This document shows positions 1 to 63,279 of a DNA stretch of 64,000 bases, one piece after another (the stretch's first letter is position 1; each line of letters starts with the position of its first letter). Location: NCBI GenBank assembly GCA_047495785.1, contig JBLDXI010000056.1, positions 310,001 through 374,000 of the forward strand. The letters run 5' to 3'. The position numbers and the translations under genes were made by a program. Source of the stretch: Lepidodermella squamata (taxonomy: Eukaryota; Animalia; Gastrotricha). Under the pieces are notes generated by a model. That model searched no databases and had not been told where the DNA came from. It was given only the letters and a program-made list of their open reading frames with translations.

Positions 1-2835
1 CCTTCGCATGCAGTCCCGGTAGCTGTTGACGGCACCAAATGCTACACTGGGTCCAACTATATGTTTCGCACGGGTAACTTCAATCGCTTGAGATTCTAGG
101 GCATGGTTCGACTTGTCGGAAACGATTTTTTCCAGGGAAGTGAGATCCCTTGGTGTTAAGGAGAGGGAACCGTCGAGGTTGGCACTGTGTTCTGCCACAA
201 TCTGCTTCACTTTGCTGGCAGGGTTGAATTTATAGTTGATTTCCTGTAAACCAATAAAAGCAGCTCTTGCTAAATCATTGCGGCAAATGCGAAGTTTGTT
301 AAAAAACGTCACACTCATCATTGTTGCCTGCACCATTTTCGAGCTTAGGCCCAGCTCGCACGCTGTTCGAATATTCGAGGTGCAGGAGTTCAGCCCCCAG
401 GCCAGTTTGTGCGCTCTTAGCATCGGTCGATCAATTTCTGGTCCAGCAAATGTTCCCCATAGTTGTGCTCCATATAGCGCGCTGCCGTACACCTTTACCC
501 CGACCAGTGTTTCCAGTTGATGTTTCTTCAGCTGGGAGACGCGGACTCCTTTCCGTTTGATGGCCGACAGGGATGTCAGCCCACGCGACACGCCGGTGGA
601 GATAGCCTCCTTCCAGTTCAGATTGAACGTGAACGGGATGCCCAAGTACTTGAAGGACCACGCACACTCGATCTTGGCACCATTTAGCGAGAAGGCATCG
701 GCAATTGATAAGATGTGTTCGGTTCTCCTCTTGCAGAAAATAACTATCTTGGTTTTGTCAACGTTTATTTCCATACCTCGAAGTTTCGCAAAGCGGTCGA
801 CGGCGTCAATCAGCCTTCGCATATTAGAGACGCTCTTAGCCAATCCCGTGGTATCGTCGGCAAACTTTAGCGCCGCCAACTTGATCTCATCGTTAATTTC
901 GGCTTCGTTGATGACGCCACAGCTTGTAAGAAATTCGGGCAAGTCGCTGATCAGTATCGAGAATAGAAGAGGTGACAACGCATCGCCCTGTTTCACTCCT
1001 TGTTCCAGATTGAACCGGTCTGTAGAGGTGTTGCCGACTCTCAGTCGGGCAAAGCTATCGCGATACAAGTCGATTAAGACTGCAATGAAGTGAGACGAAA
1101 CACCTTTCTGAAACAAAGTCTCGAATAGGATGTTGTGGGGGACGCGATCAAACGCTTTCACGAAGTCAAAAAAGCACGCAATTAGATACCCACCCTTTTC
1201 CTTCAAGGCGTTAGCAATGGCAGCGAGGAGTACAGCGGCCGCTTCAGAAGCCCCCATGCCTTCCCGAAAGCCGAACTGGTTTGGGGGGAGAATCTTGTTG
1301 TCCTCGGCCCATTTGTAGAGACGATTGTATAGTACCTTTGAATAAATGCGGTAAAATAGCGGCAGTAGTGAGATTGTTCTGTAGTTATTGGGATCTAGCT
1401 TGCTTCCCTTTTTGAATATAGCCGTCATGGTTACTTCCTTCAGCGGATTGGGGAATTTCGTTGATTCAAAGCATCTTTTGAGAAACAGAAAGGCCAGGTT
1501 AGTGAAAAATTCCTTCGTGGTGTCGTCTGCTTTAACCGCGCGTGCCGTTATGCCGTCATAGCCCGGAGCCTTGTCCAGAGGCAGGTTTTCGACAACCACC
1601 TTAACCTCGTCGAATTCGAGCTGTTTATCCAGGGCGTCGACTCTTCGATTATTGTCAAATTTAAGCTGTCCTGGATTACTGCCTGCGAACAGGTTTTTGC
1701 AGTGTTTCCACCAGTCGGTGACGTTGATTGCCGTTTCGCATGCTTCACTTTGATCTCGGAAAGCTCGAAATAATTCTTTGTTTGTTCGATCATTCATTAT
1801 TCTCTCAAGGATGGTTGATTGACTGGGTGGTCTGGGTTTTCCAGTGGTCCTGTGCAGTTTCGTGACGAAGGCTGGTTGTAATAGTTGCATAATTGTCTTG
1901 AGTTGATCGTCTGATTGTTTCGTGTCCAGTATTTCGCGAAGGTGGCCTAGCTTCGGGTTCCAGTAAGCAGCGACGCCCTTGATTATAACAGGGTCTAGGT
2001 ATGTTCTTAATCGCGATGGGCCTTGAGTACCAGGTCGGGGTTCTTGAGCCGGGACGGTGAAAAGAGTAGAGCAGATAGGTCGGTGGTCGGAGCCGAAGGA
2101 ATCATCATTAACCCAGAAGTCTATCTCGGCAAAGTTTGTGTTGTTGGAGACTAGCAGGTAGTCGAGTACAGCTTTTGATTTCATTCTAGTGATTTTGCCG
2201 ATACCCGCGTCTCTTCCCAATCTGCCATTTGCAACGATACAATCCAACTCGTGCATCATCTCCCTCATTATTCTTAGTTCGCTGTCTTTCGATCTCATTT
2301 CGTCTTCAGAGACTCTCGGTGGGCAGGGCTGGTCTTCTTCGTCGAGAAACAGACTCATATTATCTGTCCAATCTTCCCCAGCTATACGGATGTTGAAGTC
2401 GCCGTAAACGAACCAGTTTTCAAAGCAATGGGTGACATTTAGGTCGTCAAATGTAGCGATAGCATTTTGAAGCAAATCCCTTTTTTCATTGATTGAGCCA
2501 GGACGAACGTATATGAAAACGATGAGAGTTTTATTGTCGAGCAGTAACCAGAGTGAGGCGGTGTCATGGTAGAGAAATTTAACTCGATTTTCAATGGACT
2601 TATTAATTCCGAGGACAAGCCCGCCGCTAGGCCTGCCTAGTCCTGAGGAGGTGGCTATTGGTTCGATATGATATATGCGATGACTAGATGTAGGTAGGTA
2701 GTTACAGTTGAATGCCTCTAGGAGGCAGAAGATCAAAAAGTTACACAAAAATCCAATAACATCATGGTTCAGGGATCTTGAGCTTCCGCAGATATTCCAG
2801 CAGCAGACACTGACTGGATCGGGTCGGTCAATGGC
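1..2835 (-). CDS. LINE ORF2: AP endonuclease + reverse transcriptase (partial, runs off the window; absent from the ORF track)
   Basis: Hand translation gives 945 codons with no stop. APE motifs: CCWNICG, FCLLE, GRPSGG, VYGDFN, LDYLL, SDHRP. RT motifs: KAPGYDG, NYRTISLL, QFGFR, DFVKAFD, GVKQGDALSPLLF, FADD, FKYLG. Confidence 0.95.
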
Positions 2836-3873
2836 CTATTGGGACATCTCATCGTCGGTGTCGTCTTCGTCAACTCCAGGTAGAGCCATTGAGACGACTT
2901 CATCAACCGCTTTGTTGTTTAGCCAGACCTCTAGCATCTCCCGATCCATTCGAAAAACTTCATCATGAGCTTCGCTGTACCAGTAAGCTGTCAGGGACTC
3001 AGCGTGTACCATGAAACCTGTTTTAATTTTCCACTTTCTTGCTTCCTCTTCAATCTCCGTGACCTTCTTAATTTGCTCAGTAAGCCTGCGTTTGGTGTAG
3101 CGTTCCTTCGGCCCTTCATGTTGCTTGTACACAACGCCAATGCTCAATAATGCCGCATTCATCTCTCTGCAGAAAATTTGTTTGGTTCTCGCTTTGAGGT
3201 TTTTGAAGGTAACTTCCGTTATCGACTTCTTGATGGTGGTGCCATTCTTCACTTTCATCTCGATTTCGCGCGATACAACCTCGGTAGGCTCTGCCTCCTC
3301 AAACACTGATCGGGCGGACTTCGGACCGACTTTTACGGAATCAAGTTTGGAAAGAAAGACGCTAGCACTGTTGATATTCCCCATTTTGAAGAATATGAGC
3401 TTGTTGCTTGACTTGCGCTCGTCCCAGATGGCATTTGAGAGTCGTCGGAGTTCGCCTAAATTCGTCACCAGTGAAGCTGTTTTTGATTCCCGTGACGCCC
3501 TTGCTGCCCACGCGACAGCCTTTGTGGCGTTTGCCGCATTAATTGCCAACTTTCTATCGACCTCATCTGATTTCGAGCGAAGCGAGTCCACTGCAACTTC
3601 GACTGATCCTGTCCTTTCTTCCAACGCCTCAAGCCGTTCCGCTGTATTCCGGTTAGCTTCAATAGCGAGCAGCATGTTAACTCCTTTCAGCAGGAGAAGA
3701 AGTCCCGGGTCCATGACTTCGCCTTTTTTCTTGGCATAATCATCGATTGCAGACGATAGCGAGACCAGTTGCTCTTGTTGTTTCAGCGCGTCTTCCGGTG
3801 ATATGGGTTTCGGTCTCTTCCGAGCATTGGACGCGTTAACCGGTGTTGCTGCTGTTTGATCCGTTCCGCTCAT
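2836..3873 (-). CDS. LINE ORF1 protein (coiled coil + putative RRM-like nucleic-acid chaperone), 345 aa
   Basis: Lies directly upstream of ORF2; heptad-like ERLEALEERTGSVEVAVDSLR; NKLIFF...EVTFK resembles CR1/L2/L1-type ORF1 domains. Confidence 0.85.
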   Translation of the reverse strand: MSGTDQTAATPVNASNARKRPKPISPEDALKQQEQLVSLSSAIDDYAKKKGEVMDPGLLLLLKGVNMLLAIEANRNTAERLEALEERTGSVEVAVDSLRSKSDEVDRKLAINAANATKAVAWAARASRESKTASLVTNLGELRRLSNAIWDERKSSNKLIFFKMGNINSASVFLSKLDSVKVGPKSARSVFEEAEPTEVVSREIEMKVKNGTTIKKSITEVTFKNLKARTKQIFCREMNAALLSIGVVYKQHEGPKERYTKRRLTEQIKKVTEIEEEARKWKIKTGFMVHAESLTAYWYSEAHDEVFRMDREMLEVWLNNKAVDEVVSMALPGVDEDDTDDEMSQ

Positions 3874-4782
3874 TGTCGCCTCGGGCCGGTTTACTCTTTA
3901 TTCAAGCGTATTTAAGTAACGATCTTAGACACAAATCAAATTCAGATATTCGATAATTATCGATTGCTAAAGGGCGGCAAAGTGTTGTATATAGACGCTA
4001 AAATTATGTAAATTTGAAAAATAAATATCTTAGTTACAAAATAAATTTATATTATCTCATTCATAATAAGTGTCATTATGAGATGACAATTTGTGCAATT
4101 TCACCCGCTGTTTTTGCCGTTTCCCGGGGCGAACGATTGCCAAAATCCTGATTATCGCGCGATCTGCATTATCGAATCATCTATGTACCTATCGCCTGCT
4201 ATTTCTGTTTTGAAAAATAAAAGGCGTATTAGGTCAATCAGATGCTGCTTAATCTGAGTAAAGATTATGATTTTATCAGGTCAAACACGATGGTAATAAG
4301 TGACCTGTCACTGTCATTAGCTTTTTTTGGTTCACGGATCACGGAGAGCAGTTTTCAGAATTTTGGAAATTGCTTCATCCTTATTTGTTTAGTTGTTTGA
4401 CTTGCTTCATAGATAATCGATTCTATCCAAATCCAAGCTCCTTAATCTTTAGGGATAGCTCCAAGTTTACGCACCCGGCGCGCGTGCCCATTGCCTGGTA
4501 CTTCGTCTAGTCAATTCTATTTTGTAGCATTCCATGTATTCTTGTGTAATATTTCATATTGGGGGAAATGTCTCGACTCCTGACTATTCAATACCTGCAG
4601 CGAGTATCGTGGCTGATCTTTAATCTTGATTTTTTGTATAAAACTCCGATTTGCTTTACAACTTTGAAATCATACTGAGTCACTTCGGCATGCGTCCAGC
4701 CTTTCTGGTGTAGAATTTAGAAATACTATTGCTATCAATCTAGATGTTAATTTTATCTTAAATTTTATTCAACTCGGATGGT

Positions 4783-25599: not shown

Positions 25600-26470
25600 T
25601 CGCCGTGTCTTATTGTCTCATGCTCTTTCACACAAAACAAAACTATGATAAATAATGAAATGAAGTTGGTTTTTCAATTTCCCGAGTCTCTTGGTTCCAT
25701 GGGAAATCGCATGCCAAATTTGAGCGTTCTAACAAGAAACTGAATGAAAAAATTCTGGAAAATTGCAAAATTGCTAAAACCAAGCTTAAACTTCATAGAC
25801 GGAAGGAGCTTCGTGAATTCACAAATTCATCGGTGCGTAGTTGGGCGTAGGTTTTGTAGTAAGGACTGATCAATCCACTTCTCATCTGCTCCGCTGAGTA
25901 AACAAAGTTGTTCTCCTTCATAACAACTTAGGCATCCCATTTTATTTTCGGGCACGCAGCTTGCACTTGTGTAGTTATCGCACTAACTGTTTTTTAATTA
26001 TTTGAAATGGGAATAAGACAAGTTTAAGCTATAATGTCAAAAATTTATTGCCGAATGCTGGTTCCAAGTTTGAAAATATGATAGAAATTGACGGGTATGA
26101 TTAAGAAAAATGGCGCGACAATAATTTCGAATTTGTGGGCTGTAATCTTCCATCGAACTGGAGAGCTAGCTGAGTTTGCTTTGAGTTTTCTCTATTCGGT
26201 CTACAAGTAAAAGACGATTTGACTCGATCGATTACATTCGAGTGAGTGCCATTGAATCTCAAATATTCACTTGGGGTTATCGCCGATTTGAATGTTTCGC
26301 TCATTTTCGAGAGATTTTGTTTGAGAAAAATGGGGATAAGTATTTTTTATCGGATTTTTCTGGCCTTCTTCAAATTTGCACCATTATGACCTGACGATTT
26401 TTCGAATTTTTTGTCATTTTTATTCAACTTTCTGTTATTTTCTCGTAGACTTTAAGTGTCTATATTTAAA

Positions 26471-28291
26471 ATGACCGCAACACAGACGCCGGCGATCGTC
26501 ATCGACAACGGCACAGGCTACACGAAACTGGGCTACGCCGGCAACACGGTGCCGAACTTCATCATCCCATCCGCGATTGCCGTGCGCGAGTCGGCGAAAC
26601 TCGGCGACAACTCGTCGTCGCAGCGCGTCGGCCGCGGCGGCATCGACGACCTCGACTTCTACATCGGCGACGAGGCGACGGGCCCGGACGCGGTCGGCTA
26701 CTCGGTGCGCTGGCCCGTGCGCCACGGCGTCATCGACGACTGGGACCTGATGGAGAAGTTCTGGGAACAGTCCATTTTCAAGTACCTCCGCGCCGACCCG
26801 GAGGAGCACTACTTCCTGCTGACCGAGCCGCCGCTGAACCCGCCGGAAAACCGAGAATACACCGCCGAGATCATGTTCGAGTCATTCAACGTCCCGGGCT
26901 TGTACATTGTCGTCCAGGCTGTGTTAGCCCTGTGCGCGTCCTGGACGGATCAGAAGGTGGAGCGGACCCTGACCGGGTGTGTCATCGACTCTGGGGACGG
27001 CGTGACGCACGTGATCCCGGTTGCGGATGGCTATGCGATCGGGTCCTGCATCAAGCACATTCCGATTGCTGGGCGCGATATTACGTATTTCATCCAGCAG
27101 CTGTTGCGAGACCGCGAGCCGACCATTCCGCCGGAGCAGTCGCTGGAAACGGCGAAGCAGATCAAAGAGCAGATGTGCTATGTTTGCCCGGATATTGCGA
27201 AGGAGTTCGACAAGTACGACTCGAAGCCCGATAAGTGGCTAAAAGTTTTCAAAGGTACGCTTTTTTCTATGTACAAAAAACTGAACTCAAAAGTCTACAG
27301 AAATGCGCTACCCATAAGCTCCGCAATTATTTTTTGATATATCAACTTTCTTCTCGCATTTTATTTCTTTTTCCCGGAAATTGAAGCTACAAAGGGCATT
27401 CGTCATCCTTAATCCGCGTAAAAAGCGTAACATTAATCATAGAAAACCAGGAAAAACCCGCTAGTGGCAGGTTGGAACAAATTTCACCGGAGTTTTGTGA
27501 TTCCACGAAATTTCCATTGAGGGCTCTTTAAGGCTCTTTCACTTGGGCTCATGTCTAAATAAAATGCCTCTTTTACGTGTCCGAAATTGGCAAATTTGGC
27601 TCCAAGGTTTAGCTAGTGGGTTATAGGTTTTAGGCATTGAGCAACAATTTGGGCGACAGACGTGAGAATCGAGGAACTTAATTGTGCACTGTTCCAGGTC
27701 GCGTTGCGCAATTGAGCAAATAGTCTAAACACAGATTGACTAATTTTTTTATTTGTTTCCTACTGAAAATTTGAGAAATCTAATTTTGTTGTTTTTCCTG
27801 TAGGCCTGAATGCGGTGACGAAAGCCGGCTTCCAGGTGGACGTGGGCTACGAGCGGTTCCTCGGGCCGGAGGTGTTCTTCCACCCGGAGTTCGCGAACCC
27901 CGACTTCGTGACGCCGCTGCCGGAGGTCGTCGACAACGTCATCCAGGAGTGCCCGATCGACGTGCGACGAGCCTTGTACAAAAACATCGTCCTATCGGGT
28001 GGGTCGACGATGTTCAAGGACTTCGGGCGGCGGCTGCAGCGCGACATAAAGGTGACGGTGGACGGGCGGCTGCGCGCGGCCGAGGAGCTGTCGGGCGGGC
28101 AGCTGAAGCCGCAGGCTGTCGACGTGCAGGTGGTGTCGCACCCGCTGCAGCGCTACGCCGTGTGGTTCGGCGGCTCGATGCTGGCGACGTGTCCGCAGTT
28201 CCACGCGCAGTGCCACACGAAGCGCGACTACGAGGAGATCGGGCCGTCGATCGCGCGACACAACCCCATTTTCGGCATGCTGTTCACTTGA
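26471..28291 (+). CDS. ACTR3: Actin-related protein 3, 423 aa; exons 26471-27254, 27804-28291
   Basis: [68 protein letters not shown]. Confidence 0.99.
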
Positions 28292-40475: not shown

Positions 40476-42283
40476 TTACAACTCATCACGAGCCAACGAA
40501 TAGCGCAGACGGGACGGCCCCAACTTCGCAAACATGGACTCGGGCGGGTCCGTGCGGCCGCCCTGGCCGTGCGGCACCTGGCCGAAGTCGTAGTCCGCCA
40601 TCGCGTCGTCCTCGTCGCCGGCCTTCGATTTCGGAATGTGCGGCTCCTCGGTCGCGGCGTGCGGCTGCTCGCCCTCCACCTTGTTCACCTCCTGCACCGG
40701 GTCCATCGACAACTGCGGCGCCTGCGTGGGGTCAGGGCCCTGGTGGAACTCGCGGTGCAGCTTGCCCGAGTGCAGATCCAACACGAATTGCCGCAACAGG
40801 CCCGGCTTTTGCAGCTGCGACTTGACGTCGAACGGGAACAGGTACATGTGCTTGAACGAGTCGATGGCGAGCACGGGCAGATCCGACGAAGCTTTGCCTA
40901 AATGCGACAGAGGGTGCGAGAACTTGTGCCCATCGGCGTACACCGGGTTGATGAGACCCCGCTGGTCCGGCAGCTGCTTCCGCACCTCCTCCGTGAAAAT
41001 TTTGATCGTCTGCTTGTCCTCCGGGTCGTGGAACAGAATGAGGAAAGGAATGCCCTCCTCCGTCATCTCCTCCGCGTTTTCGAATGTAATCTCGCGGACG
41101 AGAGGGATGCACTTCTCGCGGATCCACACCTCCAAATCTGTGTAAGACTCGGCGTTGCCGGAAAAGTCGACGAACGACTCGGTGACGGGGCTGATGAAGC
41201 GCACCTTGTACGGGTCATCGCCGACAATCGTCGTCGGCAGAACTCCGATGAAGGCGTGGAATTTGCAGTCGTCTTTCAGCTGGCGGGCCAGTTTCTTCGC
41301 GTTTTCAACGACGCGTTGCGCCGACGAGTGCTCCTCGCCGGATTTCATCAGCACGACAATGTGCCGGTTGCGGTCGTCGAATTTCAGCACTTGCATGAGG
41401 TTGGACGCGTATTCGATCGGGTCTTTCATTTCGTTGCGCAGGTACTCCTTGATGGCCTCGGCGGATCGGGAGCCGCGGTACTCGCGCCGCACGACCTCGC
41501 CGTTTCTGAACAGTTTGATGGTTGGGTATTTGTTGACGCCGAATTTCTGGCACAGCGGCTGCGAGCCGGGGCCTTCGCAGTCGACGCGGGCCAGTTTGAT
41601 TTGCGCGGCCGAGAACTCGCGGCCCACCGAGTTGGACGTTTCCTCGAAGACGGGCGCCAACTGCCGGCTGAAGTGGCACCAGTCGGCGTAGAAGTTGGCG
41701 AGAACCAGCTCGGATGACGTCACCGTCTCCAGGAAATTGTCCTCCGTGAGCTGGATCAAATCGGCTGAGGCCAAGGCGACAAAAACCTGAATAGAAAAAA
41801 AAATGCACAAAAATATTATGATTAATTGAACAGAGAGAGATAAACATTTATTAAAAAAATTGGACTGCCTAATTCAATAATAATTAGGTTGCCTTGCGAC
41901 ACAGTGAGTATGAATTATATTTTAAAATTATTTGTGTTTTTTGTGGTTGAAATAGATATGGATTGAATCTTTAAGAATCGATTTTGAAATATCAGAAAGT
42001 AGTTGAAAGTAAAAAATTGCAGAACATTAATTTCTTGAAATTTCAATGAACATTTTTTGAAAGATTTGAAATTTGAAATTATTTTAAATTTAAATCATAA
42101 TTTGAAAATAATATTATTTTATGATTATTGTTCAACTGTAGCCCTAAATCGCAAAAGTGACCCTCGATTTTCCCCAAAAAAGAATCTAAAAAATCAAAAA
42201 TTCCCCCATATAACACTTCTCGAAGAACATTTCGAAATGGAATTGAAACTTACAAAGCTGAGCAGAGCGGTGACTAGTCGCAT
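40476..42283 (-). CDS. ERP44: ER resident protein 44, 446 aa; exons 42283-42254, 41786-40476
   Basis: Signal peptide; FYADWCHFS; KYPTIKLFRNG..REYRGSRS; PLVREITFENAEEMTEEG; DSFKHMY; C-terminal RDEL. Confidence 0.97.
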
Positions 42284-53379: not shown

Positions 53380-53702
53380 TTAGCTTCAGCTGTAAGATCG
53401 GAGTTAGGACGCGATTTTGTTTCGTTGGGTCTGAGCTAATGGCTCACCTGAGTTTGAGTAGCCTACTGCGTACTTTACTGTCACCTACTGCCACGCGGAG
53501 TATGGGAAAAATCAGGGTCAGTGATGATATTTGGCAGTTTGTTTACGCCGATTGCGAATGACGTTGTGCCATGGACCTTAAACTTTGAAACGCAGTCGTT
53601 GATTAGTAGAAGGCTGATGACTGAGGAGGTGCTACTTAGATGCGATCCACGAAGAGCTGGTCTGAGAATAGCTCAATCGCGTACTGATAATGGCCAAATG
53701 GG

Positions 53703-54440
53703 CAGGTCCCGGGTTACCGGGGACTGCTGTTAGTCGGCAGACCCCCTCCCCGTTTTTCTCCGTTTGTCCTTGACGCCCGCGGCAAATGCCGTTCGTGTCA
53801 TTTACATTCTTCAAAATTTGTTAAACGTTACTTGAGTAATATAAAAATTAAATAAAAATTTAAAATGACCTTGAACATTTTATTTTCAATTTTTTGGCGC
53901 GTGACTTCAGGTTTCCCGTCAGGCGATACCGACCTGTCGAATTAATGCGTGAAATTTTGTCAGGATTCAGTTGACGATTCAGGATTAGTGAATATCAAAA
54001 AACTAGCATGGTATTGCATTCAGGAATGGAACAGTTACATTAATAAGTTGATACTATTTTGCTTTGCGGAGCAACCCAGCTGCGTACAAATATCTGCCTA
54101 ATTTCGGAAGTGCGCCAAAATATCGGTATCGGTGTATTGCGCGCACTTGCGCGATAATTAGCGATAATAGACCATTAGACGCACACGCAGAATGGTCGTA
54201 ATGATCGTGTGGCAAATGGAAGTGCGTAAGTAAGAAGTGTGTAGGATTGATTGATGGACAATTTTAGTCAGACGTTATTCTTCGCTGCCAATGACCGCGA
54301 CATTGGGTGAACAGAATTATTCCGCAACCATAAGCCTGACACCTCGCTGGAAAAATCAGTCAGCTGTTGCCTTCCAATTGGAGAGTTTAAATATTACCAG
54401 AAAATCGATGAACATTAGTACATTGATTGAAACATTGGTT
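53703..54440 (+). repeat. Interspersed repeat, copy 1 (uninterrupted); copy 2 is 55906-55947 + 61995-about 62400, split by the 6-kb TIR element
   Basis: CAGGTCCCGGGTTACCGGGGACTGCTGTTAGTCGGCAGACCC is identical at both sites; collinear similarity continues for about 350 bp after 61995, then becomes patchy. Confidence 0.9.
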
Positions 54441-54456
54441 GTTGATGGTTTATAGT

Positions 54457-54905
54457 TGTTACATTGAGAGTGTCGAATCGTTGAAAGTGCACTTTCCACG
54501 CACGAATTTCCATTGAAAGTGAACTTTCAATATTGAAAGTATACTATCCCCCATGGAAAGTATACTCTCAATAAAAAGATATGCATTGAGAGTAGACGCT
54601 AACAAATGTCCATTGTTTCTCCCGTCTTGAGCAGCCAAAAGAGTACTCTCAATAAAAGGATGGAACATCTTTTGCGTGGAAAGTATACTCTCCATGAAAT
54701 GATCGAGTTTCTTTAGCATGGAAAGTTCACATTCAATAAGTGATATCGTGGAAAGTAAACTCTCAATGAGCGTCTTTTTATTGAAAGTATACTCTCCATG
54801 GGGGAAAGTGTACTTTCAATATTGAAAGTTCACTTTTTCTCACTTTCAATGAAAAAAGGCCCATTGAGAGTTAACTCTCAACGATTCGACACTCTCAATG
54901 CAACA
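54457..54905. mobile_element. Foldback MITE with TGT...ACA ends (Ginger-like), 449 bp
   Basis: Ends TGTTACATTGAGAGTGTCGAATCGTTGA and TCAACGATTCGACACTCTCAATGCAACA; long imperfect arms built from GAAAGTATACTCTC units; flanks TAGT/TAAT. Confidence 0.85.
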
Positions 54906-54929: not shown

Positions 54930-55029
54930 TTGCCTTACGCGCACTTGCTTCGCAGTGTGACGTAATGGGCAGGTCCCAATTATTTTCCCTCCTGGTATCT
55001 GGGATCCTGAACTTGTGATCATTTGAACA
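54930..55029 (+). repeat. About 100-bp repeat with a GCTTCGC-loop hairpin; inverted partner at 63181-63279
   Basis: CTTACGCGCACTTGCTTCGCAGTG(T/C)GACGTAATGGGCAGGTCCCAATTATTTT.. occurs in both orientations. Confidence 0.9.
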
Positions 55030-56569
55030 GTGGGACTGTTAACATGCTCGCTTTCGCTCGCATATGTAAACAGTCCCAAAGCTTCTCCATATGATGAACA
55101 TTTATCAGTCTTATTTTCTGTCATTTTTACCATCCACTTTCTTCTGTCTCCACTCGCATTAGCAGTGTCGCCTATAATCTTCATAGTCGTTTATCGTTTA
55201 TCGTATGATCGTTTCCATCTTTTATATCCCCTGTTTTCCTAACAAAAGTAATAATGATAGTTTTTCAAGAGTTAAAGAAAATCGGCTTAGCCACAGCCGA
55301 GTCGAGATACCTCAGAATAACGCAAAATTCCTTACCAACCGTAGATATAAACGATGGCCATATCCCATATCGTGCCTTAACTATTTTTTGCTCTTCATTT
55401 TGTTTTAAAATAATATGCGACGATATACAAACGTTTACATGGGCAGTAAGTCATTTGAAAGGGCATGAGCTCGTATAGCTCCGCTATTCCCGCATAGACA
55501 TAATTTAAGATGGACTGACTACCCCTTCCATTCCCTTCATACACCAATGTAAATCCCATGTACAGATTGCAATGTTTCTTACCGACTCGTTTGAACGAAT
55601 CTGCATGAAGAATGAAAATAACACAATTTCCTTAATCTTCGCATTATATTAGCATTGATTTTTTGATACAAGCCTCCAGTCAACAGATTGAGTTTAGCTT
55701 GAAGTTAAAGTTGGTCTTGCAGAGAATTCCCGATAAAATAGTGATTGTGCCATCTGAGCAGTAAAACATTGCTTGACTTTCTAACAGAATCAACCACCCT
55801 GCCGATGATAGTAACATTGGGTAAACAATAATTATTCCACAACCATTTACGTCTTACACCTTACAACTCGCTATAGAAAATAATATAGTATCACCTGTTG
55901 CCTTTCAGGTCCCGGGTTACCGGGGACTGCTGTTAGTCGGCAGACCCCGGTGCGCGCGCGTCATAAGGGCCCAGCGATCCCCGGATATTTTCGTCCAACC
56001 CGCAAACTATAAAAAATAATAATTATGAAAATATTATTACGCAACTTCCTTGTTATATAAATATTTATTTGTCTGCCTTAAAACGAATGATTTATAAATA
56101 TATATCAAAATTGCAATTTTCTACTTCCTTTGTCGGCTTTTTGTTGTTTTGCGCTTATAGTTTTCTGCATTTCTTTTCGTTAGCCGTTTTGAAATTTTTG
56201 AAATTCGCGCTCAGTGTCCTTGTCGCAAGCAGAGTCATCTGACGGGCGCATTTCATGTGACCAAGAAGTGACCGGCACGTGACGCGCGAGTTAAACTTTA
56301 CTCAATAATGTGTTATCTCATATAATCTTATTGGTAATAAGCGAAAAAACTAAAAACTGACAGTTGATTATGCGTAGTAACTAGAAGCGTGCTTAGTTTT
56401 CTATCTAGCCCTGGCCTGCGCGTCGTGTTTTTTTTACATAACCCCGATGACCGGTCAACCTAGGTCCTAGGTGTGACAGTTCTGCAGGTTTTTCACTCGT
56501 TTCACGTACTATGTATTATGCTAATCGAACTGATCGAACTCGGCCAGCTGTTGAACATAATCCTTGTAA

Positions 56570-58000
56570 ATCTTATAGATCCTCGTAAAACATAGGTTAT
56601 CGAACATTGCTATTCGAGTTCACCCCACTCTCTCCGACTTTGTCGTTCTAAATTCTAATAAGAAATAAGATCTGCATTAAACATGTGTACGATCTTTCGT
56701 AATTCTAAATCCTTACTTGCCTCTTGATTATGCCAGCTCAATCAGCGCTAAGGATATCGTTGCCTGGGTAAACTCATCACGACAGCATCTTTTTTTATGA
56801 TTTTCATTTTTCATGATTTAAGCACTTGGAATTACTTCCCTTCCCCTATCGCCATGAGTCAGTTCTTCCGGAAACTTGAATCTTCCTCTTAGATCGATTT
56901 CTGAAAGCAAAACACGAGGAAAATTCATTCTCGAGTCTTGACCAATAACGCAGAGGAAGATTTAACTGTCCACAACTCGGCGCCTGATTGAAAGATGAAA
57001 CCAACGAATGGATGCATGCATGTAAACCCCTTTTTTATCAAGTATTGTGCGAATATACCACATACCACATACCAGACTGACGGAAAGTTTATAGATTGCT
57101 GGGCTAGCTACTAAAAGTTAGGAAGGAGAAATTGCTTTATATTTTGTTGAAGTTGAAAGTTATGTTACTAAGTGTTCGATTGCTGACCACTGACCATCAG
57201 TTGTCAGTTAGTATTCTCTCAAATGATTATATGGCCCTCTTATTGGTAGGAATAACTTAGTGAGTTTTGCAAAACAGCCTTACGAAATTCAGGCTAATGC
57301 AGAGAACATTATTTTCATCGCTTCTCTAGTCTGATCTACTCAAGTTTCATTCTTATTTAGACTTGTGTTCTAATTGCCGTGTGAAGCATGAAGAATCAGC
57401 ATATATCCAACGCCTCTCCTGGATTCAATGGCGCGTCAATTGAGTTCCGAACGACCTTGTATGGTACAGATTGGTATCATTACACATCACACGTTCTATT
57501 AGAGTTATCTTGCGCCGTGTAGCTTAATATTGGTTGGTTGAAATCGTGTTTTCAGCCTCGAATAAAAAGTCTAGATTGACCTTGCATCAATCTCAACGTC
57601 TTTCGAGTTGAATGGTTATTATCAACTCGAGCCTATCGCCAAGGAATTGCAACGTCGGAATTCTCAGTGGTTACAAATAAGTGTTCCTGCTTAAAGATGA
57701 TGCTGCTGATGGCTATGCTGCTAGATTCCTAAATATGCCTCTGGTGGTATGTTATTATTTCTAATATTGTTCCAATTGGGTATTTTAACATTTTGTTTTT
57801 AGATCTATCGCTCTTTCAACTTTTGAAGATGGCGCTAGCTCTCAGCACTTCGCGGGAGCAGTTGTCGAGTCAGTTATCAACATTTGGAGGTTGGAATTGA
57901 AGGATCTAGGCTGATATATTCTTCAGATTTTCATGGAGAACTTGTATTAGCCGCTGTTAACTGTTAACCAATGAATCTTTCGACACATTCTGGGGTCTGC
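56570..58000 (+). pseudogene. Unidentified decayed intron-containing gene inside the TIR element
   Basis: Short protein-like frames broken by stops; typical AT-rich intron GTATGT...TTTTAG at about 57747-57802. Confidence 0.35.
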
Positions 58001-59004
58001 GAAGTTTGGCCCCGCATTCTCGTTATAACGTGCGAGATATCTATACCTAGCGAACGATAGGTACATTGCATGATGAATGACAAGCCTGTGTGAAGTTTTT
58101 ATCTTCATTTAGACCTTATTAGAAAAATATACCTTGGCATGCGATGTTTTGCGATGTTTTTATAATCAGTCATTTCACGTGATTTTGCTCGATAAGAGTC
58201 AGGCTTAAATAAATTATGATAGCTTTTGCTGGGGAATTCACTGTTTTTAACCTTCATTTTTTGCCTGAACTAACTTTTAACTAACTTTTTCATGATAGCT
58301 TATTGGCTTGATTATGATAAAGGATAGGTACGACGCATGATATATTATTTACAAATTTATCCGAAGCTGAATGTATCGAAGATTTACGTGATATAGACAC
58401 AGCCTACATACAGCATGCTATTGGGCTCATTTATTTGAAGTGAAATGAATTGATTTATATGAATCGATTCGAGTTGAATTTTAGGTTTGAGGTATAGAGC
58501 GATTGAGAGCTGATTAAATTTATTTCGCCAGAGTTGCCACTCACGAGCTGAGTTTTAGAACTGGTTCCACGACTGTCAAGCCAGTCCTACTTACTATTGT
58601 CAATTCAAGGTCCGTTCTTCAGACTCAGCGCTAGCCTGAGTTTTATTAACCAATACCGATCGGATAAACCTCGACCAGGAATTCGCGAGATCAGGAATAA
58701 TCTTTCGAATTGGCTTGGAACTTTTAATTCAGTGAATAGCGAATGACGAGAGCACACATTTATTTTCGCATGGGACTGTGGACTGGCAACTATCAGGTAT
58801 AGCTTGAACTAAAGCTCTTCAATCTTGCGGACTCGATTTTTTTTCTTACTCTTGAAATCGTCTCTGAATATAATCGATAAATCCCGAATTTTCCTCTACA
58901 TCATCTTTAATCAACCCATAGATGATCAACATTCGGTCAAAATTGAGCAAGAATGTGTTATACCGTTATCACTAGAATGAAAGTGACCACCCTTCTTCCA
59001 TCTA

Positions 59005-59077
59005 GCCGAGATAGCTCAGTTGGGAGAGCGTTAGACTGAAGATCTAAAGGTCCCTGGTTCGATCCCGGGTCTCGGCG
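59005..59077 (+). tRNA. tRNA-Phe(GAA)
   Basis: Canonical cloverleaf GCCGAGATAGCTCAG..CTGAAGA..GGTTCGATCCC..CTCGGCG; downstream TTTTT. Confidence 0.97.
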
Positions 59078-59145
59078 TACCTTTTTGCGCTGCCTTTGGC
59101 CTGTCCTAATGCTATGTTAGAAGCCCACGAGGGTTTTCTATCGTA

Positions 59146-59217
59146 GGCCCGTTGGTCTAGGAGTACGATTCTCGCTTTGGGTGCGAGAGGTCTCTGGTTC
59201 AATTCCCGAACGGGCCC
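59146..59217 (+). tRNA. tRNA-Pro(TGG), slightly degenerate
   Basis: GGCCCGTTGGTCTAG..TTTGGGT..GGTTCAATTCC..CGGGCCC; one T-stem mismatch and a D-loop G>A change. Confidence 0.88.
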
Positions 59218-59293
59218 ACTAGTTTTTTCTTCATTTGAATTTCAACAAGGTATTGAAAATTTATCACATAATCCAGGCATTTTATTTCATATC

Positions 59294-59365
59294 TCCCTGA
59301 TGGTCTAGTGGTTAGGATTCCGCGCTTTCACCGCGGCGGCCCGGGTTCGATTCCCGGTCATGGAA
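59294..59365 (+). tRNA. tRNA-Glu(TTC)
   Basis: TCCCTGATGGTCTAGTGG..CTTTCAC..GGTTCGATTCCC; one acceptor-stem mismatch. Confidence 0.92.
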
Positions 59366-59579
59366 AGTTTTACTATGAAATGAGTTTTTTTTTAAAAATC
59401 ACTGCTTATCGCAAAAAATCGAGCTCAGGAGCTCAGGAAAAATCGAGCTTAGAATGCTCAATCTTCCGCTACCTGGGCAGACACTCTATCACTAAGCTAC
59501 TATCCCTTTGGCTTAGATGGCCATGCAGTCCCAAATTTAAGCTGCCGAAGCAAAAGATTCGTGAAAATTTTGTTTTTGT

Positions 59580-59653
59580 AGGATACTTACGGGTGCCGAT
59601 CCCGTTGCCTCTCGCATGTTAGGCGAGCGCTCTACCATTTGAGCTAATGCCCC
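59580..59653 (-). pseudogene. tRNA-Ala-derived gene with anticodon AAC, probably a pseudogene
   Basis: GGGGCATTAGCTCAAATGGTAGAGCGCTCGC CTAACAT GCGAG..GGGATCG is an Ala(AGC) body; the 3' acceptor strand has a mismatch plus an extra base. Confidence 0.8.
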
Positions 59654-59728
59654 ATGTGTTTGAGTCAATATTTATAACAAAGGCATTCTCAACAATAACG
59701 TAAAACTAGCAGTAAGTTTTTGAAAAGT

Positions 59729-59805
59729 TGGCGCCCATCGGGAGACTCGAACCCCAGAAACTGCGATTAACTGCTCACGGGAGACCAGGGTTCGATTGCA
59801 TGCCA
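59729..59805. pseudogene. Fused tRNA remnants: minus-strand 3' half (Asn-like GTT loop) back-to-back with a plus-strand 3' half (Asp/Gly-like)
   Basis: Minus: CAGTTAA..GGGGTTCGAGTCTCC..GGCGCCA; plus: GGGAGACCAGGGTTCGATT. Confidence 0.6.
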
Positions 59806-59866
59806 AGAGCTAGCTTTTTCCTCGATTTGAAAGCTGAACTATGCGTGTTGGCCAAAAATGTACAAT

Positions 59867-59939
59867 CGCCCGATGTGGGGCTCGAACCCACGACCCTGGG
59901 ATTAAGAGTCCCATGCTCTACCGACTGAGCTAACCGGGC
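59867..59939 (-). tRNA. tRNA-Lys(CTT)
   Basis: GCCCGGTTAGCTCAGTCGGTAGAGCATGGGACTCTTAATCCCAGGGTCGTGGGTTCGAGCCCCACATCGGGCG; TTTTT terminator downstream. Confidence 0.98.
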
Positions 59940-60196
59940 TGAGACAGAGTAGTGTACTGCTACATTTTATATTTCCTTACTGTTATTACTTCTGGATTAA
60001 AAGCAATCGCAGAAAAAATTAAATGGTCGCGTGCTCTTTGAACCAACCAATCACGGACTTGAAACCAACCGACCAATCAGATAATTGTGGATTCACTGAT
60101 TCCACTAAGTCCTTATTTTTAAATTTGTTGGTTACACACTCACGCCTTTTAATTTAGATATTTAACTCAATTTAAAACATTCCAATTTCTCGAAGA

Positions 60197-61290
60197 TGGC
60201 CGTAGGTCCACCACCGATGAGCATGTCTACTACAACCTTTCCAACACCACCTGGAGCAGGGATTTTTTCGCCATCCGTTGTGTTCAAAGTATCTCGACTT
60301 TCCCGAACGAAAGAAGATCAAGTTATCAGAATTTATCGATAATGCGAATTGCGAACTCGCATATACGCCAGGTTTCGAGATAGTGGATCTTCAGATTTCG
60401 AACTGCCGGAGCCAATCATTCGAAAATCGAAGTGGAACTGTACGGAATGTTCTGTTTCTGTCAACTGTTTCTGTTAAGCTAGAATTCATTTGGACGAAAC
60501 TAAACCAGTGGGAACTTTGGCGCGTGGCTCGTGGCTCGAAGAATGGCTCATTTCTCAACCGAGGTTGGCAGACGGCAATTAAACAACAAATCCAAGGCTC
60601 GGGAATTATGTAAATTTCTAAATTCACAATTAGTTTTCTTATTGTGTTCGTATTTTTTCCTTATAGAATCTTGTCAAAGCCCTGGCTGGATTATTATTAC
60701 TACAATCTGATATATTACGAGTGGGAAACTCGATCCGAAGAGCAAGCTTCCAATAACAATAAAGCCGTGCCAATCGGCGACTTTTTAACACGCCTCGTTT
60801 CATGCCATACTCAGCTCGGCGTTTTAAATTAAGTTACAAACTGTGAAAAGTGCTCTCAGGTTTCTCGCCAAGCTTCGAATGCATCTTTGACTACTTCGAT
60901 CGTGGATTTCGGACATCAAACTGAGCCCTTGACAGAGTTATCTGTTATCGAGCCCTGATTTCTGGCGAGGCTTTGAACTCTGAATGAAATCGAACCCTGG
61001 CATCAGTCAGCCAACAAACAGAGGAATGAATAATTTTAAATACAACCGATTTGGTTCACTGGCGAACTGTGGCGCGGATTTAAACACTTTGCGAAGCGAT
61101 TTGTTGGAACTGCTTTCTCTCGTCTCAAGTTGTCGAGATAGATAACAAATTCTTCATTTTCGAATGTTCATAATGCTTTTCGGTTCTTGTTGAATGGATT
61201 TTGGATTCGATTTTGAACTTTCATGCTGGCTTCAATGCTGGCTTTGATTTAGCGAAAATCAATCGAACTTGTATTTGGGCTGGAACCTTT
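60197..61290 (+). pseudogene. Decayed KDM4-like JmjC histone demethylase gene inside the TIR element
   Basis: Collinear motif resemblances: RKKIKLSEFIDNANCELAYTP (about 60308), QWELWRV, ILSKPWL after an intron at about 60610-60666, FGHQTE..LSV (60908), FHAGFNAGFDLA (61219). Many stops and frameshifts. Confidence 0.55.
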
Positions 61291-63180
61291 TCTGAAGCTG
61301 CGCACGCATAAACTTTCAAATTATTATGGATGAACGGCTCAACGAATTTGACCAAACATCATTCTGCGCTGGCTTTACTCCTCTTTCTTATTTATGATTA
61401 TTTCGTCTTTCTATGCGAAATTATTCGTGGCTTCGAGAAATTTCTTATTGCAAATAAACCAAACATCGTGGTCTGCCAATTTGTTTTTTCTTTATGATTT
61501 GAGTTTAAGGCATGGAAAACCGAAATTGAAAAATCCAGCGGAAGCGATTATGAACATTTAAAAATATTCCCGATCGATTGATAAAGTTCGCGGTTTTACA
61601 GTTTAATATGTAATTATTGGACACGGCGATAAGCAGAAAAAGCCGCTAAGCGTATATTTTTTGCCAACTAGGATGCTGCTGCTCTGAAAGTTCAAGGAGG
61701 TAGATTCCAATCAGAAAATAAGTTTTATAATAATGATCATATTACGCGCTACGCTCGCGTAATTTTGGTATTATTATATGCCGTAGTATAACGCATATAT
61801 TAATGCTCTTAATAATAAGCAAAGTACGCAAGCGCCTGAAATCGCGATTTTACGTCATTTCAACCCGAAAAATTGTTCGATTTCAATTTTGAGCGATTTT
61901 AAAGTGATAGGGACGTCATTTCCTATCGAATGATACCTTTCAAGCGGTCAAATAGGTCTCCGGCGAGTTGGGCCCTTATGACGCGCGCGCATCGACCCCC
62001 TCCCCGTTTTTCTCCGTTTGTCCTTGACGCCCGCGGCAAATGCCATTCATTTCATTTACATGTTTAAAAATTTGCTGAAAGTTAGTTGAGTAATATTAAA
62101 ACAAAATAAAAATTTGAAATGACCTTGAAAAATTTATTTTCAATTTTTTGGCGTGTGACTTCGAGTTTTCCGTCAGGCTCTACCTACCGACCTGTCAGGA
62201 TTGAGTTGATGATTCAGGATTAGTGAGTATGAGTATCAAAAAAATATCAAGGTTTTGCATTCAGGAATGGAACATTTACATTATTAATTTGATACTATTT
62301 TGCTTTGCGTCCGCGTACAAATATCTGCCTTTCTAACTGGAGAATTTGAATGTTAGCCGACAGAAAATCGATCAATAAAATAGAAACATTGTTGAAACAT
62401 TACTTTTTGAGAGTTCTGTATATTTGTAGTATCGTATAACGCAATTTCTCCCAATAGCCGATTGAGATATCCCAATGTGCAATCCGAATTGTTCCCAACG
62501 TCATTTTCAGCTATTTTAAACAGTTTTTTTTTAAATTTGGAAACCAAGCAAGATTGCAGAATAGCCCTTCGCCTATCTAGCAGAGCCCATTTTCCCTAAT
62601 AACTTGTTCCGTAACTGCGTGTTCTATGAGTTATTAAAAAGCTAGCATATTTTCACTGTAACAGTCTTCTGGCCTTCTAGGTCCATTTAAACTCTTTATT
62701 AATCAATTTGCAGACCAATCGATAGGGCTCTTCATGCTCTTTAATATGATGTGATACATTATAATTCAATAACCTGAAGGCTGATGAAAACAATAGGCAA
62801 AAAGCAACTTTCGGATTGCTCATTGAGACATCTCTATCGGCAATTGGGGGATTGCCAATACAATATACAATACTACATATTAATTATTACGAAACATATG
62901 CGAACTTGTCCAATGCATTACAATGATGAAACATTTATCAGCCTCAATTCTACCATGCACTTACTAAAATTTGGTCACATTTTGACGTATTCTGTTATTC
63001 GTAACGTAGAGCCATTTACCACCAAATTTTTGAAAGTAATATCCTATCAAAGCCGTTCCCAGAGACTTTGAGTCCCAGACCTTACGACAGACCTTAGGAA
63101 GAAGACTGCTTAGGAAAATTCTTGATTTCGTTTCGAAATGTAAAATCGATGCGCTTGGTCCAGGTTCGGACGAAATGATA

Positions 63181-63279
63181 TGTTGAAATGATCGCCAGTT
63201 CAGGATCCCATTTCCAGGAGGAAAAATAATTGGGACCTGCCCATTACGTCGCACTGCGAAGCAAGTGCGCGTAAGACAA
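63181..63279 (-). repeat. Inverted copy of 54930-55029
   Basis: Reverse-complement match read directly. Confidence 0.9.

What the first reader, a model, noticed from the sequence alone, without database searches (positions are those of the whole stretch)
55948..61994. A 6-kb TIR transposon that moves a mixed tRNA gene cluster, with the empty target site visible nearby
Seen: 26-bp TIRs (25/26) and a duplicated target. The unbroken target GGCAGACCCCCTCCCCG is present in another copy of the host repeat at about 53740, which indicates a true insertion. Between the TIRs, within 940 bp, lie Phe, Pro, Glu and Lys tRNA genes, an Ala-derived gene and two half-genes. Known: SINEs derive from tRNAs and Dada elements target them, but I do not know multi-isotype tRNA cassettes as usual cargo of animal TIR elements. 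The CGGTG/CGATG terminus with a GC-rich 4-bp (or 6-bp) TSD matches no superfamily signature I recognise. Inference: a family that disperses tRNA clusters.
Basis: partly seen in the sequence, partly recalled or inferred. Interest (0 to 1): 0.88.

Follow-up and report, generated by a model that had tools for sequence, protein, structure and literature searches.

The report
Jumping DNA carrying a tRNA cluster
A 6-kb piece of cut-and-paste jumping DNA with no enzyme of its own has landed inside another mobile element, and it holds a partly decayed cluster of seven different transfer-RNA genes or gene halves; this is one more sign that tRNA gene blocks travel as transposon passengers in this small animal, although other copies of this particular element could not be checked.

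Summary
55948-61994 has 26-bp TIRs (25/26) and a perfect target duplication (ACCC, or GACCCC if each end moves in one base). Removing it restores 88 bases identical to an empty paralogous site near 53740. The host repeat has the ends of a DINE-1/HINE (Helentron-type) element. Inside, 935 bp hold tRNA-Phe and -Lys (intact), -Glu (one mismatch), -Pro (degenerate), an Ala-body pseudogene with a Val anticodon, and two fused 3' halves. No transposase was found. A KDM4 relic proposed by the scan was not supported when its pieces were searched apart. Best reading: a non-autonomous Pack-TIR-type transposon, perhaps Sola1 (4-bp duplication; from memory), that jumped with a captured tRNA block. The scan noted this kind of cargo before, on other DNA of this genome (at least seven TIR-bounded tRNA cassettes; one follow-up reports many copies; unchecked by me). 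No paper found describes such cargo in animal TIR elements. The claim that the termini fit no superfamily is not established.

The parts
55948..61994 (.). Non-autonomous TIR element, 6047 bp (55949-61993 if the duplication is 6 bp)
55948..55973 (+). Left TIR, 26 nt, begins CGGTG
61969..61994 (-). Right TIR, 26 nt, begins CGATG on the minus strand; one mismatch at position 3
55944..55947 (+). Left target-site duplication ACCC (55943-55948 in the 6-bp reading)
61995..61998 (+). Right target-site duplication ACCC (61994-61999 in the 6-bp reading)
59005..59077 (+). tRNA-Phe(GAA); 68 bits, no non-standard pair flagged; T-run follows
59146..59217 (+). tRNA-Pro(TGG), degenerate: D-loop GG changed, one T-stem mismatch, 42 bits
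59294..59365 (+). tRNA-Glu(TTC), nearly intact: one acceptor-stem mismatch, 58 bits
59581..59653 (-). Pseudogene with an Ala-type body (isotype from memory) and anticodon AAC; two acceptor mismatches, B-box broken, 38 bits
59731..59771 (-). 3' half of a tRNA gene (Lys/Asn-like, from memory) with intact B-box and T-run; boundaries approximate
59772..59810 (+). 3' half of a tRNA gene (Asp-like, from memory), fused back to back with the other half; T-run follows; boundaries approximate
59867..59939 (-). tRNA-Lys(CTT), all stems paired, 70 bits, T-run at +9
55974..59002 (.). Left interior, 3 kb, A+T-rich, no coding signal found (longest stop-free stretch 88 aa against 102 in shuffles)
59940..61968 (.). 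Right interior, 2 kb; holds the by-eye KDM4-like stretch (about 60166-61308), which searches did not support
55906..63279 (+). Host element that received the insertion: DINE-1/HINE-like repeat, 5'-clipped, about 1.3 kb without the insert; 3' subterminal repeat at 63232-63245 followed by a stem-loop
   Evidence: defining features from PMC4067079
53697..54460 (+). Second copy of the host repeat with the empty target (53736-53752), a 14-nt 5' subterminal repeat and a nested hairpin; right boundary approximate

Best explanation
This is a non-autonomous cut-and-paste DNA transposon of the Pack-TIR kind. SHOWN: a TIR-bounded 6-kb block sits between duplicated target bases, 42 bp into a HINE copy; it holds seven tRNA-derived units and no detectable transposase. 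INFERRED: a transposase made elsewhere (best guess Sola1) recognised the 26-nt ends, cut the block out and inserted it with a 4-base staggered cut. An ancestor of the element had already copied a block of host tRNA genes, probably by template switching during gap repair from one of the genome's tRNA arrays. The block then travelled as a passenger, and most of its genes decayed while two or three stayed usable. The net effect is to scatter tRNA genes and RNA polymerase III promoters to new sites.
For: TIRs, a perfect duplication and an empty paralogous site. No ORF or domain in 40 pieces. The junctions look young (88/88 identical flank, 25/26 TIR) while the cluster is decayed, which fits a load older than this insertion. 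No nested inverted-repeat pair frames the cluster. No parent tRNA gene lies in the 59 kb to the left, whereas 57% of animal Pack-TIRs lie within 15 kb of their parent and multicopy ones lie far away (PMC8277862). Leads only: scan notes of other tRNA-loaded TIR elements, of tandem tRNA arrays and of cargo-carrying Sola1 elements.
Against: Only one copy was seen. Only 2 kb to the right is visible, so a nearby parent there is not excluded. tRNA genes are known to mutate fast (from memory), which weakens the age argument. The superfamily rests on one ambiguous junction and on remembered signatures. Most animal Pack-TIRs are single-copy and arise without transposition.
Confidence: 0.6

Rival explanations
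1. One-off capture. The transposon inserted first, and the tRNA block was copied into this single copy later by gap-filling repair, so it never moved with the element.
For: This is the commonest route for animal Pack-TIRs: only 1.4% were multicopy (PMC8277862). The scan notes abundant tRNA arrays in this genome (s1-430914; unchecked). No second copy was seen.
Against: The block is more decayed than the junctions. No parent lies in 59 kb on the left. No breakpoints or nested repeats were found around the block.
Confidence: 0.18
2. Selected cargo. The element keeps the block because clustered polymerase III promoters (TFIIIC-bound B-boxes) act as a chromatin barrier that protects it from silencing, or otherwise help it spread. 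The tRNA products matter little.
For: Both half-genes kept the B-box half and the terminator and lost the 5' half. Five of seven B-boxes fit the consensus. The scan notes the same kind of load in elements of different sizes, one with hAT-type ends (unchecked), which would mean repeated acquisition. tRNA genes acting as barriers is established knowledge in yeasts and mammals (from memory).
Against: One deletion between two divergent genes leaves both 3' halves by geometry alone. Two B-boxes are broken, and Pro has an A-box change. A non-autonomous element needs no transcription in order to move. No comparison across copies was possible.
Confidence: 0.17
3. Composite or nested structure. Two short elements flank a piece of host DNA, or a smaller tRNA-bearing element jumped into the 6-kb element.
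For: The scan notes 0.85-1.9-kb TIR-bounded tRNA cassettes elsewhere in this genome. The interior resembles ordinary non-coding DNA.
Against: The TIR core occurs only twice, so there are no inner ends. The longest repeat shared between the two sides of the cluster is 11 nt, at chance level.
Confidence: 0.05

Closest known systems
Pack-TIRs of animals (Tan et al. 2021, PMC8277862) and plant Pack-MULEs
   Same: Non-autonomous TIR element with a target duplication that holds captured host DNA.
   Different: Their captured pieces are short (median 224 bp), and the word tRNA does not occur in that paper's main text. Here the load is a 935-bp block of several isotypes. The parent locus was not identified.
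Sola1 DNA transposons
   Same: 4-bp duplication and a C/G first base (from memory); length near the 5.4-kb mean for bivalve Sola1 (PMC10294476); cargo-carrying Sola1 elements noted in this genome (unchecked).
   Different: No transposase here; the target is GC-rich; the TIR was not compared with any Sola1 end; a 6-bp reading remains open.
Dada transposons (Kojima and Jurka 2013, PMC3706591)
   Same: Linked to tRNA genes; 6-7-bp duplication, which matches the alternative 6-bp reading.
   Different: Dada inserts into small-RNA genes, and no TIRs were found in it. This element has TIRs, carries the genes inside and sits in a HINE.
tRNA-derived SINEs that multiply tRNA genes (birds, PMC8044555)
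   Same: A mobile element raises tRNA gene number; the copies decay.
   Different: SINEs have one tRNA head at the 5' end and move through RNA. Here seven units of different isotypes lie on both strands in the middle of a DNA element.
Arabidopsis tRNA-Cys cluster overlapping annotated Helitrons (PMC10701932)
   Same: A tRNA cluster proposed as transposon cargo.
   Different: One isotype in tandem repeats; the Helitron call was not confirmed by prediction tools; the authors call it a would-be first case of non-coding RNA capture by a Helitron.
DINE-1/HINE elements (Thomas et al. 2014, PMC4067079), for the host repeat
   Same: 12-15-nt subterminal inverted repeats, a hairpin at the 5' repeat, and a stem-loop between the 3' repeat and the end.
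   Different: Autonomous Helentron partner and TT target not shown; the filled copy lacks the first 6 nt of its 5' repeat.

Membership tests
Non-autonomous TIR DNA transposon | Terminal inverted repeats | tested here: met
   26 nt, 25/26
Non-autonomous TIR DNA transposon | Target-site duplication confirmed by an empty site | tested here: met
   Paralogous empty site, 88 identical bases across the junction
Non-autonomous TIR DNA transposon | No intact transposase | tested here: met
   Longest stop-free stretch 130 aa, at shuffle level; no Pfam hit. Pfam lacked Sola and Academ models as of PMC5751038, so a decayed relic could be missed.
Pack-TIR | Host-derived sequence between the ends | tested here: met
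   Five eukaryote-type tRNA genes and two halves
Pack-TIR | Identified parental locus | not testable with these tools
Multicopy tRNA-carrying family | Same load at several sites with different duplications | not testable with these tools
Sola1 | 4-bp duplication (from memory) | tested here: inconclusive
   4-bp and 6-bp readings fit equally
Sola1 | Sola1 transposase, or ends shared with an autonomous Sola1 (Repbase rule: same duplication length and positions 1-11 aligned) | not testable with these tools
   No transposase; no Repbase or genome access; defining papers not held
Academ | 3-bp or 3-4-bp (memory) duplication and TAG-type ends (memory) | tested here: inconclusive
   Ends are CG, not TAG; a 4-bp duplication is possible
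Dada | Inserted inside a small-RNA gene, no TIRs | tested here: not met
   Target is a HINE; TIRs are present
tRNA-SINE | Single tRNA head followed by a body and tail | tested here: not met
   Seven units on both strands, each closely followed by a T-run
DINE-1/HINE (host repeat) | 12-15-nt subterminal inverted repeats, 5' hairpin, 3' stem-loop | tested here: met
   53697-53710 against 63232-63245; hairpins fold (criteria)
DINE-1/HINE (host repeat) | TT target and autonomous Helentron partner | not testable with these tools
   No complete copy with both flanks in the window
KDM4/JmjC relic (s1-393995) | JmjN/JmjC similarity | tested here: inconclusive
   No hit for separate pieces in Pfam, PDB, two protein libraries or the Atlas. 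The joined read-through was left out.

The most novel reading that the evidence does not exclude
Several unrelated TIR superfamilies in this animal have independently acquired multi-isotype tRNA clusters and keep them under selection as a working module, such as a polymerase III/TFIIIC barrier against silencing. DNA transposons would then be the main engine of tRNA gene dispersal in this genome, and this 6-kb element would be a separate lineage of such carriers.
Probability: 0.2. Interest if true: 0.85.

Novelty: new variant of a known kind. Interest (0 to 1): 0.52.

Why it matters
tRNA genes turn over and change place quickly in animal genomes, and the mechanism is poorly known. SINEs copy single tRNA heads and tandem arrays grow locally, but neither moves mixed clusters to new sites. 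A cut-and-paste vehicle with a dated junction gives a direct route, and a test bed for whether polymerase III promoters help a transposon or only ride along. The gain from this locus alone is moderate: it is one copy, mostly decayed, and the scan has noted the same kind of cargo elsewhere in this genome.

Tried and rejected
Local scripts worked beside them.

TIR pattern scans: full TIR in metagenome contigs, 0 hits; viral contigs, 0. An 18-nt core gave 13 hits in 60-70% GC contigs with no further match and no tRNA gene, so they are chance.

Protein routes to other copies: the left-end reading frame found nothing. The 130-aa frame gave one hit, a repetitive ORF in a bacterial-type contig, rejected.

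KDM4 relic: pieces searched apart gave nothing. Motif likeness by eye gave two competing positions for the same motifs, so I do not count it.

A nested element around the cluster, a composite of short elements, Dada and SINE readings were rejected. A 5-bp duplication would need asymmetric ends and was rejected.

Ten paper searches found no animal TIR element with a multi-isotype tRNA load (bear on this). The library lacks Repbase Reports and most subscription journals, so this is not proof of absence. The findings look-up by sequence was blank, which means nothing.
Full report
Observation. The element at 55948-61994 has 26-nt inverted ends with one mismatch at position 3. The 23-nt core occurs twice in the window, against 0.00 expected in shuffles. 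The flanks read ...GGCAG ACCC | element | ACCC CCTCC..., and joining them after removing one ACCC gives a string identical over 88 bases to a second copy of the host repeat starting at 53703, falling to about 88% further on. This is a true insertion, judged from a paralogous and not an orthologous empty site. Because the outermost C and G can be assigned to either side, the duplication is 4 bp with CGGTG/CGATG ends or 6 bp (GACCCC) with GGTG/GATG ends. One locus cannot decide. A mismatch at position 3 is a little easier to accept than one at position 2 (inference).

The load. ARAGORN finds four tRNA genes in 64 kb, all inside the element. Rfam scores Lys 70, Phe 68, Glu 58 and Pro 42 bits, and a fifth gene at 59581-59653 at 38 bits. 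Lys has all stems paired. Glu has one acceptor mismatch. Pro has a changed D-loop and one T-stem mismatch. The fifth gene has an Ala-type body (from memory), anticodon AAC, two acceptor mismatches and a broken T-loop. Two 3' halves are fused back to back near 59772, as one deletion between divergent genes would leave them (inference). Every unit is followed by a T-run within about 14 nt, as expected for polymerase III genes. So two genes are intact, one is nearly intact and four units are damaged.

The rest of the interior. Neither the 3 kb on the left nor the 2 kb on the right has a reading frame longer than shuffles give (88 against 102 aa; 130 against 105 aa, reached by 24 of 200 shuffles). 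Forty stop-free pieces gave no Pfam hit above a cut-off. The KDM4-like relic noted by the scan (s1-393995) found no support in PDB, Pfam, two protein libraries or the Atlas. The only hit was a repetitive ORF in a bacterial-type contig. The pieces were searched apart, and the joined read-through was left out as required, so a very decayed relic is not excluded. No inverted repeat longer than chance frames the tRNA block.

The target. The host repeat begins with a 14-nt motif at 53697-53710 that overlaps a hairpin. The same motif returns inverted at 63232-63245, followed by a stem-loop and an end near 63279. A third copy's 3' end lies on the minus strand at 54930-55029. These are the features given for DINE-1/HINE elements (PMC4067079). 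The TIR element therefore sits 42 bp inside a 5'-clipped HINE of about 1.3 kb. This explains both the empty site and the 100-bp inverted repeat around the region.

Other copies. One run holds 68% and one from another study 20% of the element's sampled words. TIR scans of public contigs gave nothing or chance hits, and a protein route failed.

What the scan noted before. These are AI notes that I could not check. The genome is probably a gastrotrich (s1-401918). At least seven other TIR-bounded tRNA cassettes of 0.85-1.9 kb are listed on other pieces, one with hAT-type ends. The follow-up of s1-404896 reports ends at many sites, several joined to the same tRNA load. A 27-gene tRNA block forms tandem arrays (s1-430914). 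Large cargo-carrying Sola1 and CMC elements are noted. I could not compare their ends with these, so I do not know whether this element is kin to any of them. These notes raised my prior for a family and gave the Sola1 lead. They are not evidence for this element.

Mechanism. Shown: ends, duplication, empty site, load, no enzyme. Inferred: mobilisation in trans; capture of the block by template switching before this jump; passive carriage. The load looks older than the jump, because the junctions are unchanged while the cluster has point changes and a deletion, and no parent lies in 59 kb on the left. In animals, single-copy Pack-TIRs mostly arise by gap filling from nearby DNA, and multicopy ones lie far from their parents (PMC8277862). 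That paper also supplies the main rival, since multicopy cases were only 1.4%. I give 0.6 to passive carriage by a mobile family, 0.18 to one-off capture in place, 0.17 to a load kept for its promoters and 0.05 to a nested or composite structure.

Comparison with what is known. It works like a Pack-TIR and meets the tested criteria for a non-autonomous TIR element. It is not Dada, which inserts into small-RNA genes and showed no TIRs (PMC3706591). It is not a SINE (PMC8044555). The nearest published claim of tRNA cargo that I found is an unconfirmed Helitron overlap in Arabidopsis (PMC10701932). The superfamily is open. I therefore neither file it as Sola1 nor accept that it fits nothing.

Verdict. 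Real and well bounded; a new variant of a known kind. The unusual point is a multi-isotype tRNA block inside an animal cut-and-paste element, which my paper searches did not find described, in a library with known gaps. The family claim is untested for this element, and the scan has noted the same kind of cargo on other DNA. Interest 0.52.

Noticed in passing
window 53697-54460, 55906-63279, 54930-55029: Three pieces of a DINE-1/HINE-like family with a 14-nt subterminal repeat, a 5' hairpin and a 3' stem-loop; two in plus orientation, and one 3' end in minus orientation.
   Followed up: yes
window 54457-54905: A+T-rich fold-back piece of about 450 bp (66-nt arms at 80%, inner 78-nt arms at 90%) built from 27-nt subrepeats; looks like a MITE placed between HINE pieces.
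   Followed up: no
window 59581-59653 (-): Ala-type tRNA body with a Val (AAC) anticodon; acceptor stem and T-loop are broken, so it is probably not a working mistranslator.
   Followed up: partly
window 60988-61000 (-): A lone 13-nt match to the B-box region of the plus-strand half-gene at 59785-59797 (E 0.10); possibly a stray B-box, possibly chance.
   Followed up: partly
window 59414-59460: Short tandem duplication, 24-nt unit in 1.9 copies, in the spacer between Glu and the Ala-type gene.
   Followed up: no
window 1-3897 (-): Two long open frames (353 aa, and 945 aa running off the window) that read like ORF1 and an endonuclease-first ORF2 of a LINE retrotransposon (by eye).
   Followed up: no
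window 4762-51524: Dense host genes with short introns; by eye a bHLH protein, Arp3 (26456-28288), an ERp44-like protein (40479-41873 minus), an HMG-box protein and an IFT57-like protein. CpG is not depleted (observed/expected about 1.3).
   Followed up: no
L001 10001-11242: Repetitive 413-aa ORF in a bacterial-type metagenome contig; a chance hit to the 130-aa frame.
   Followed up: yes
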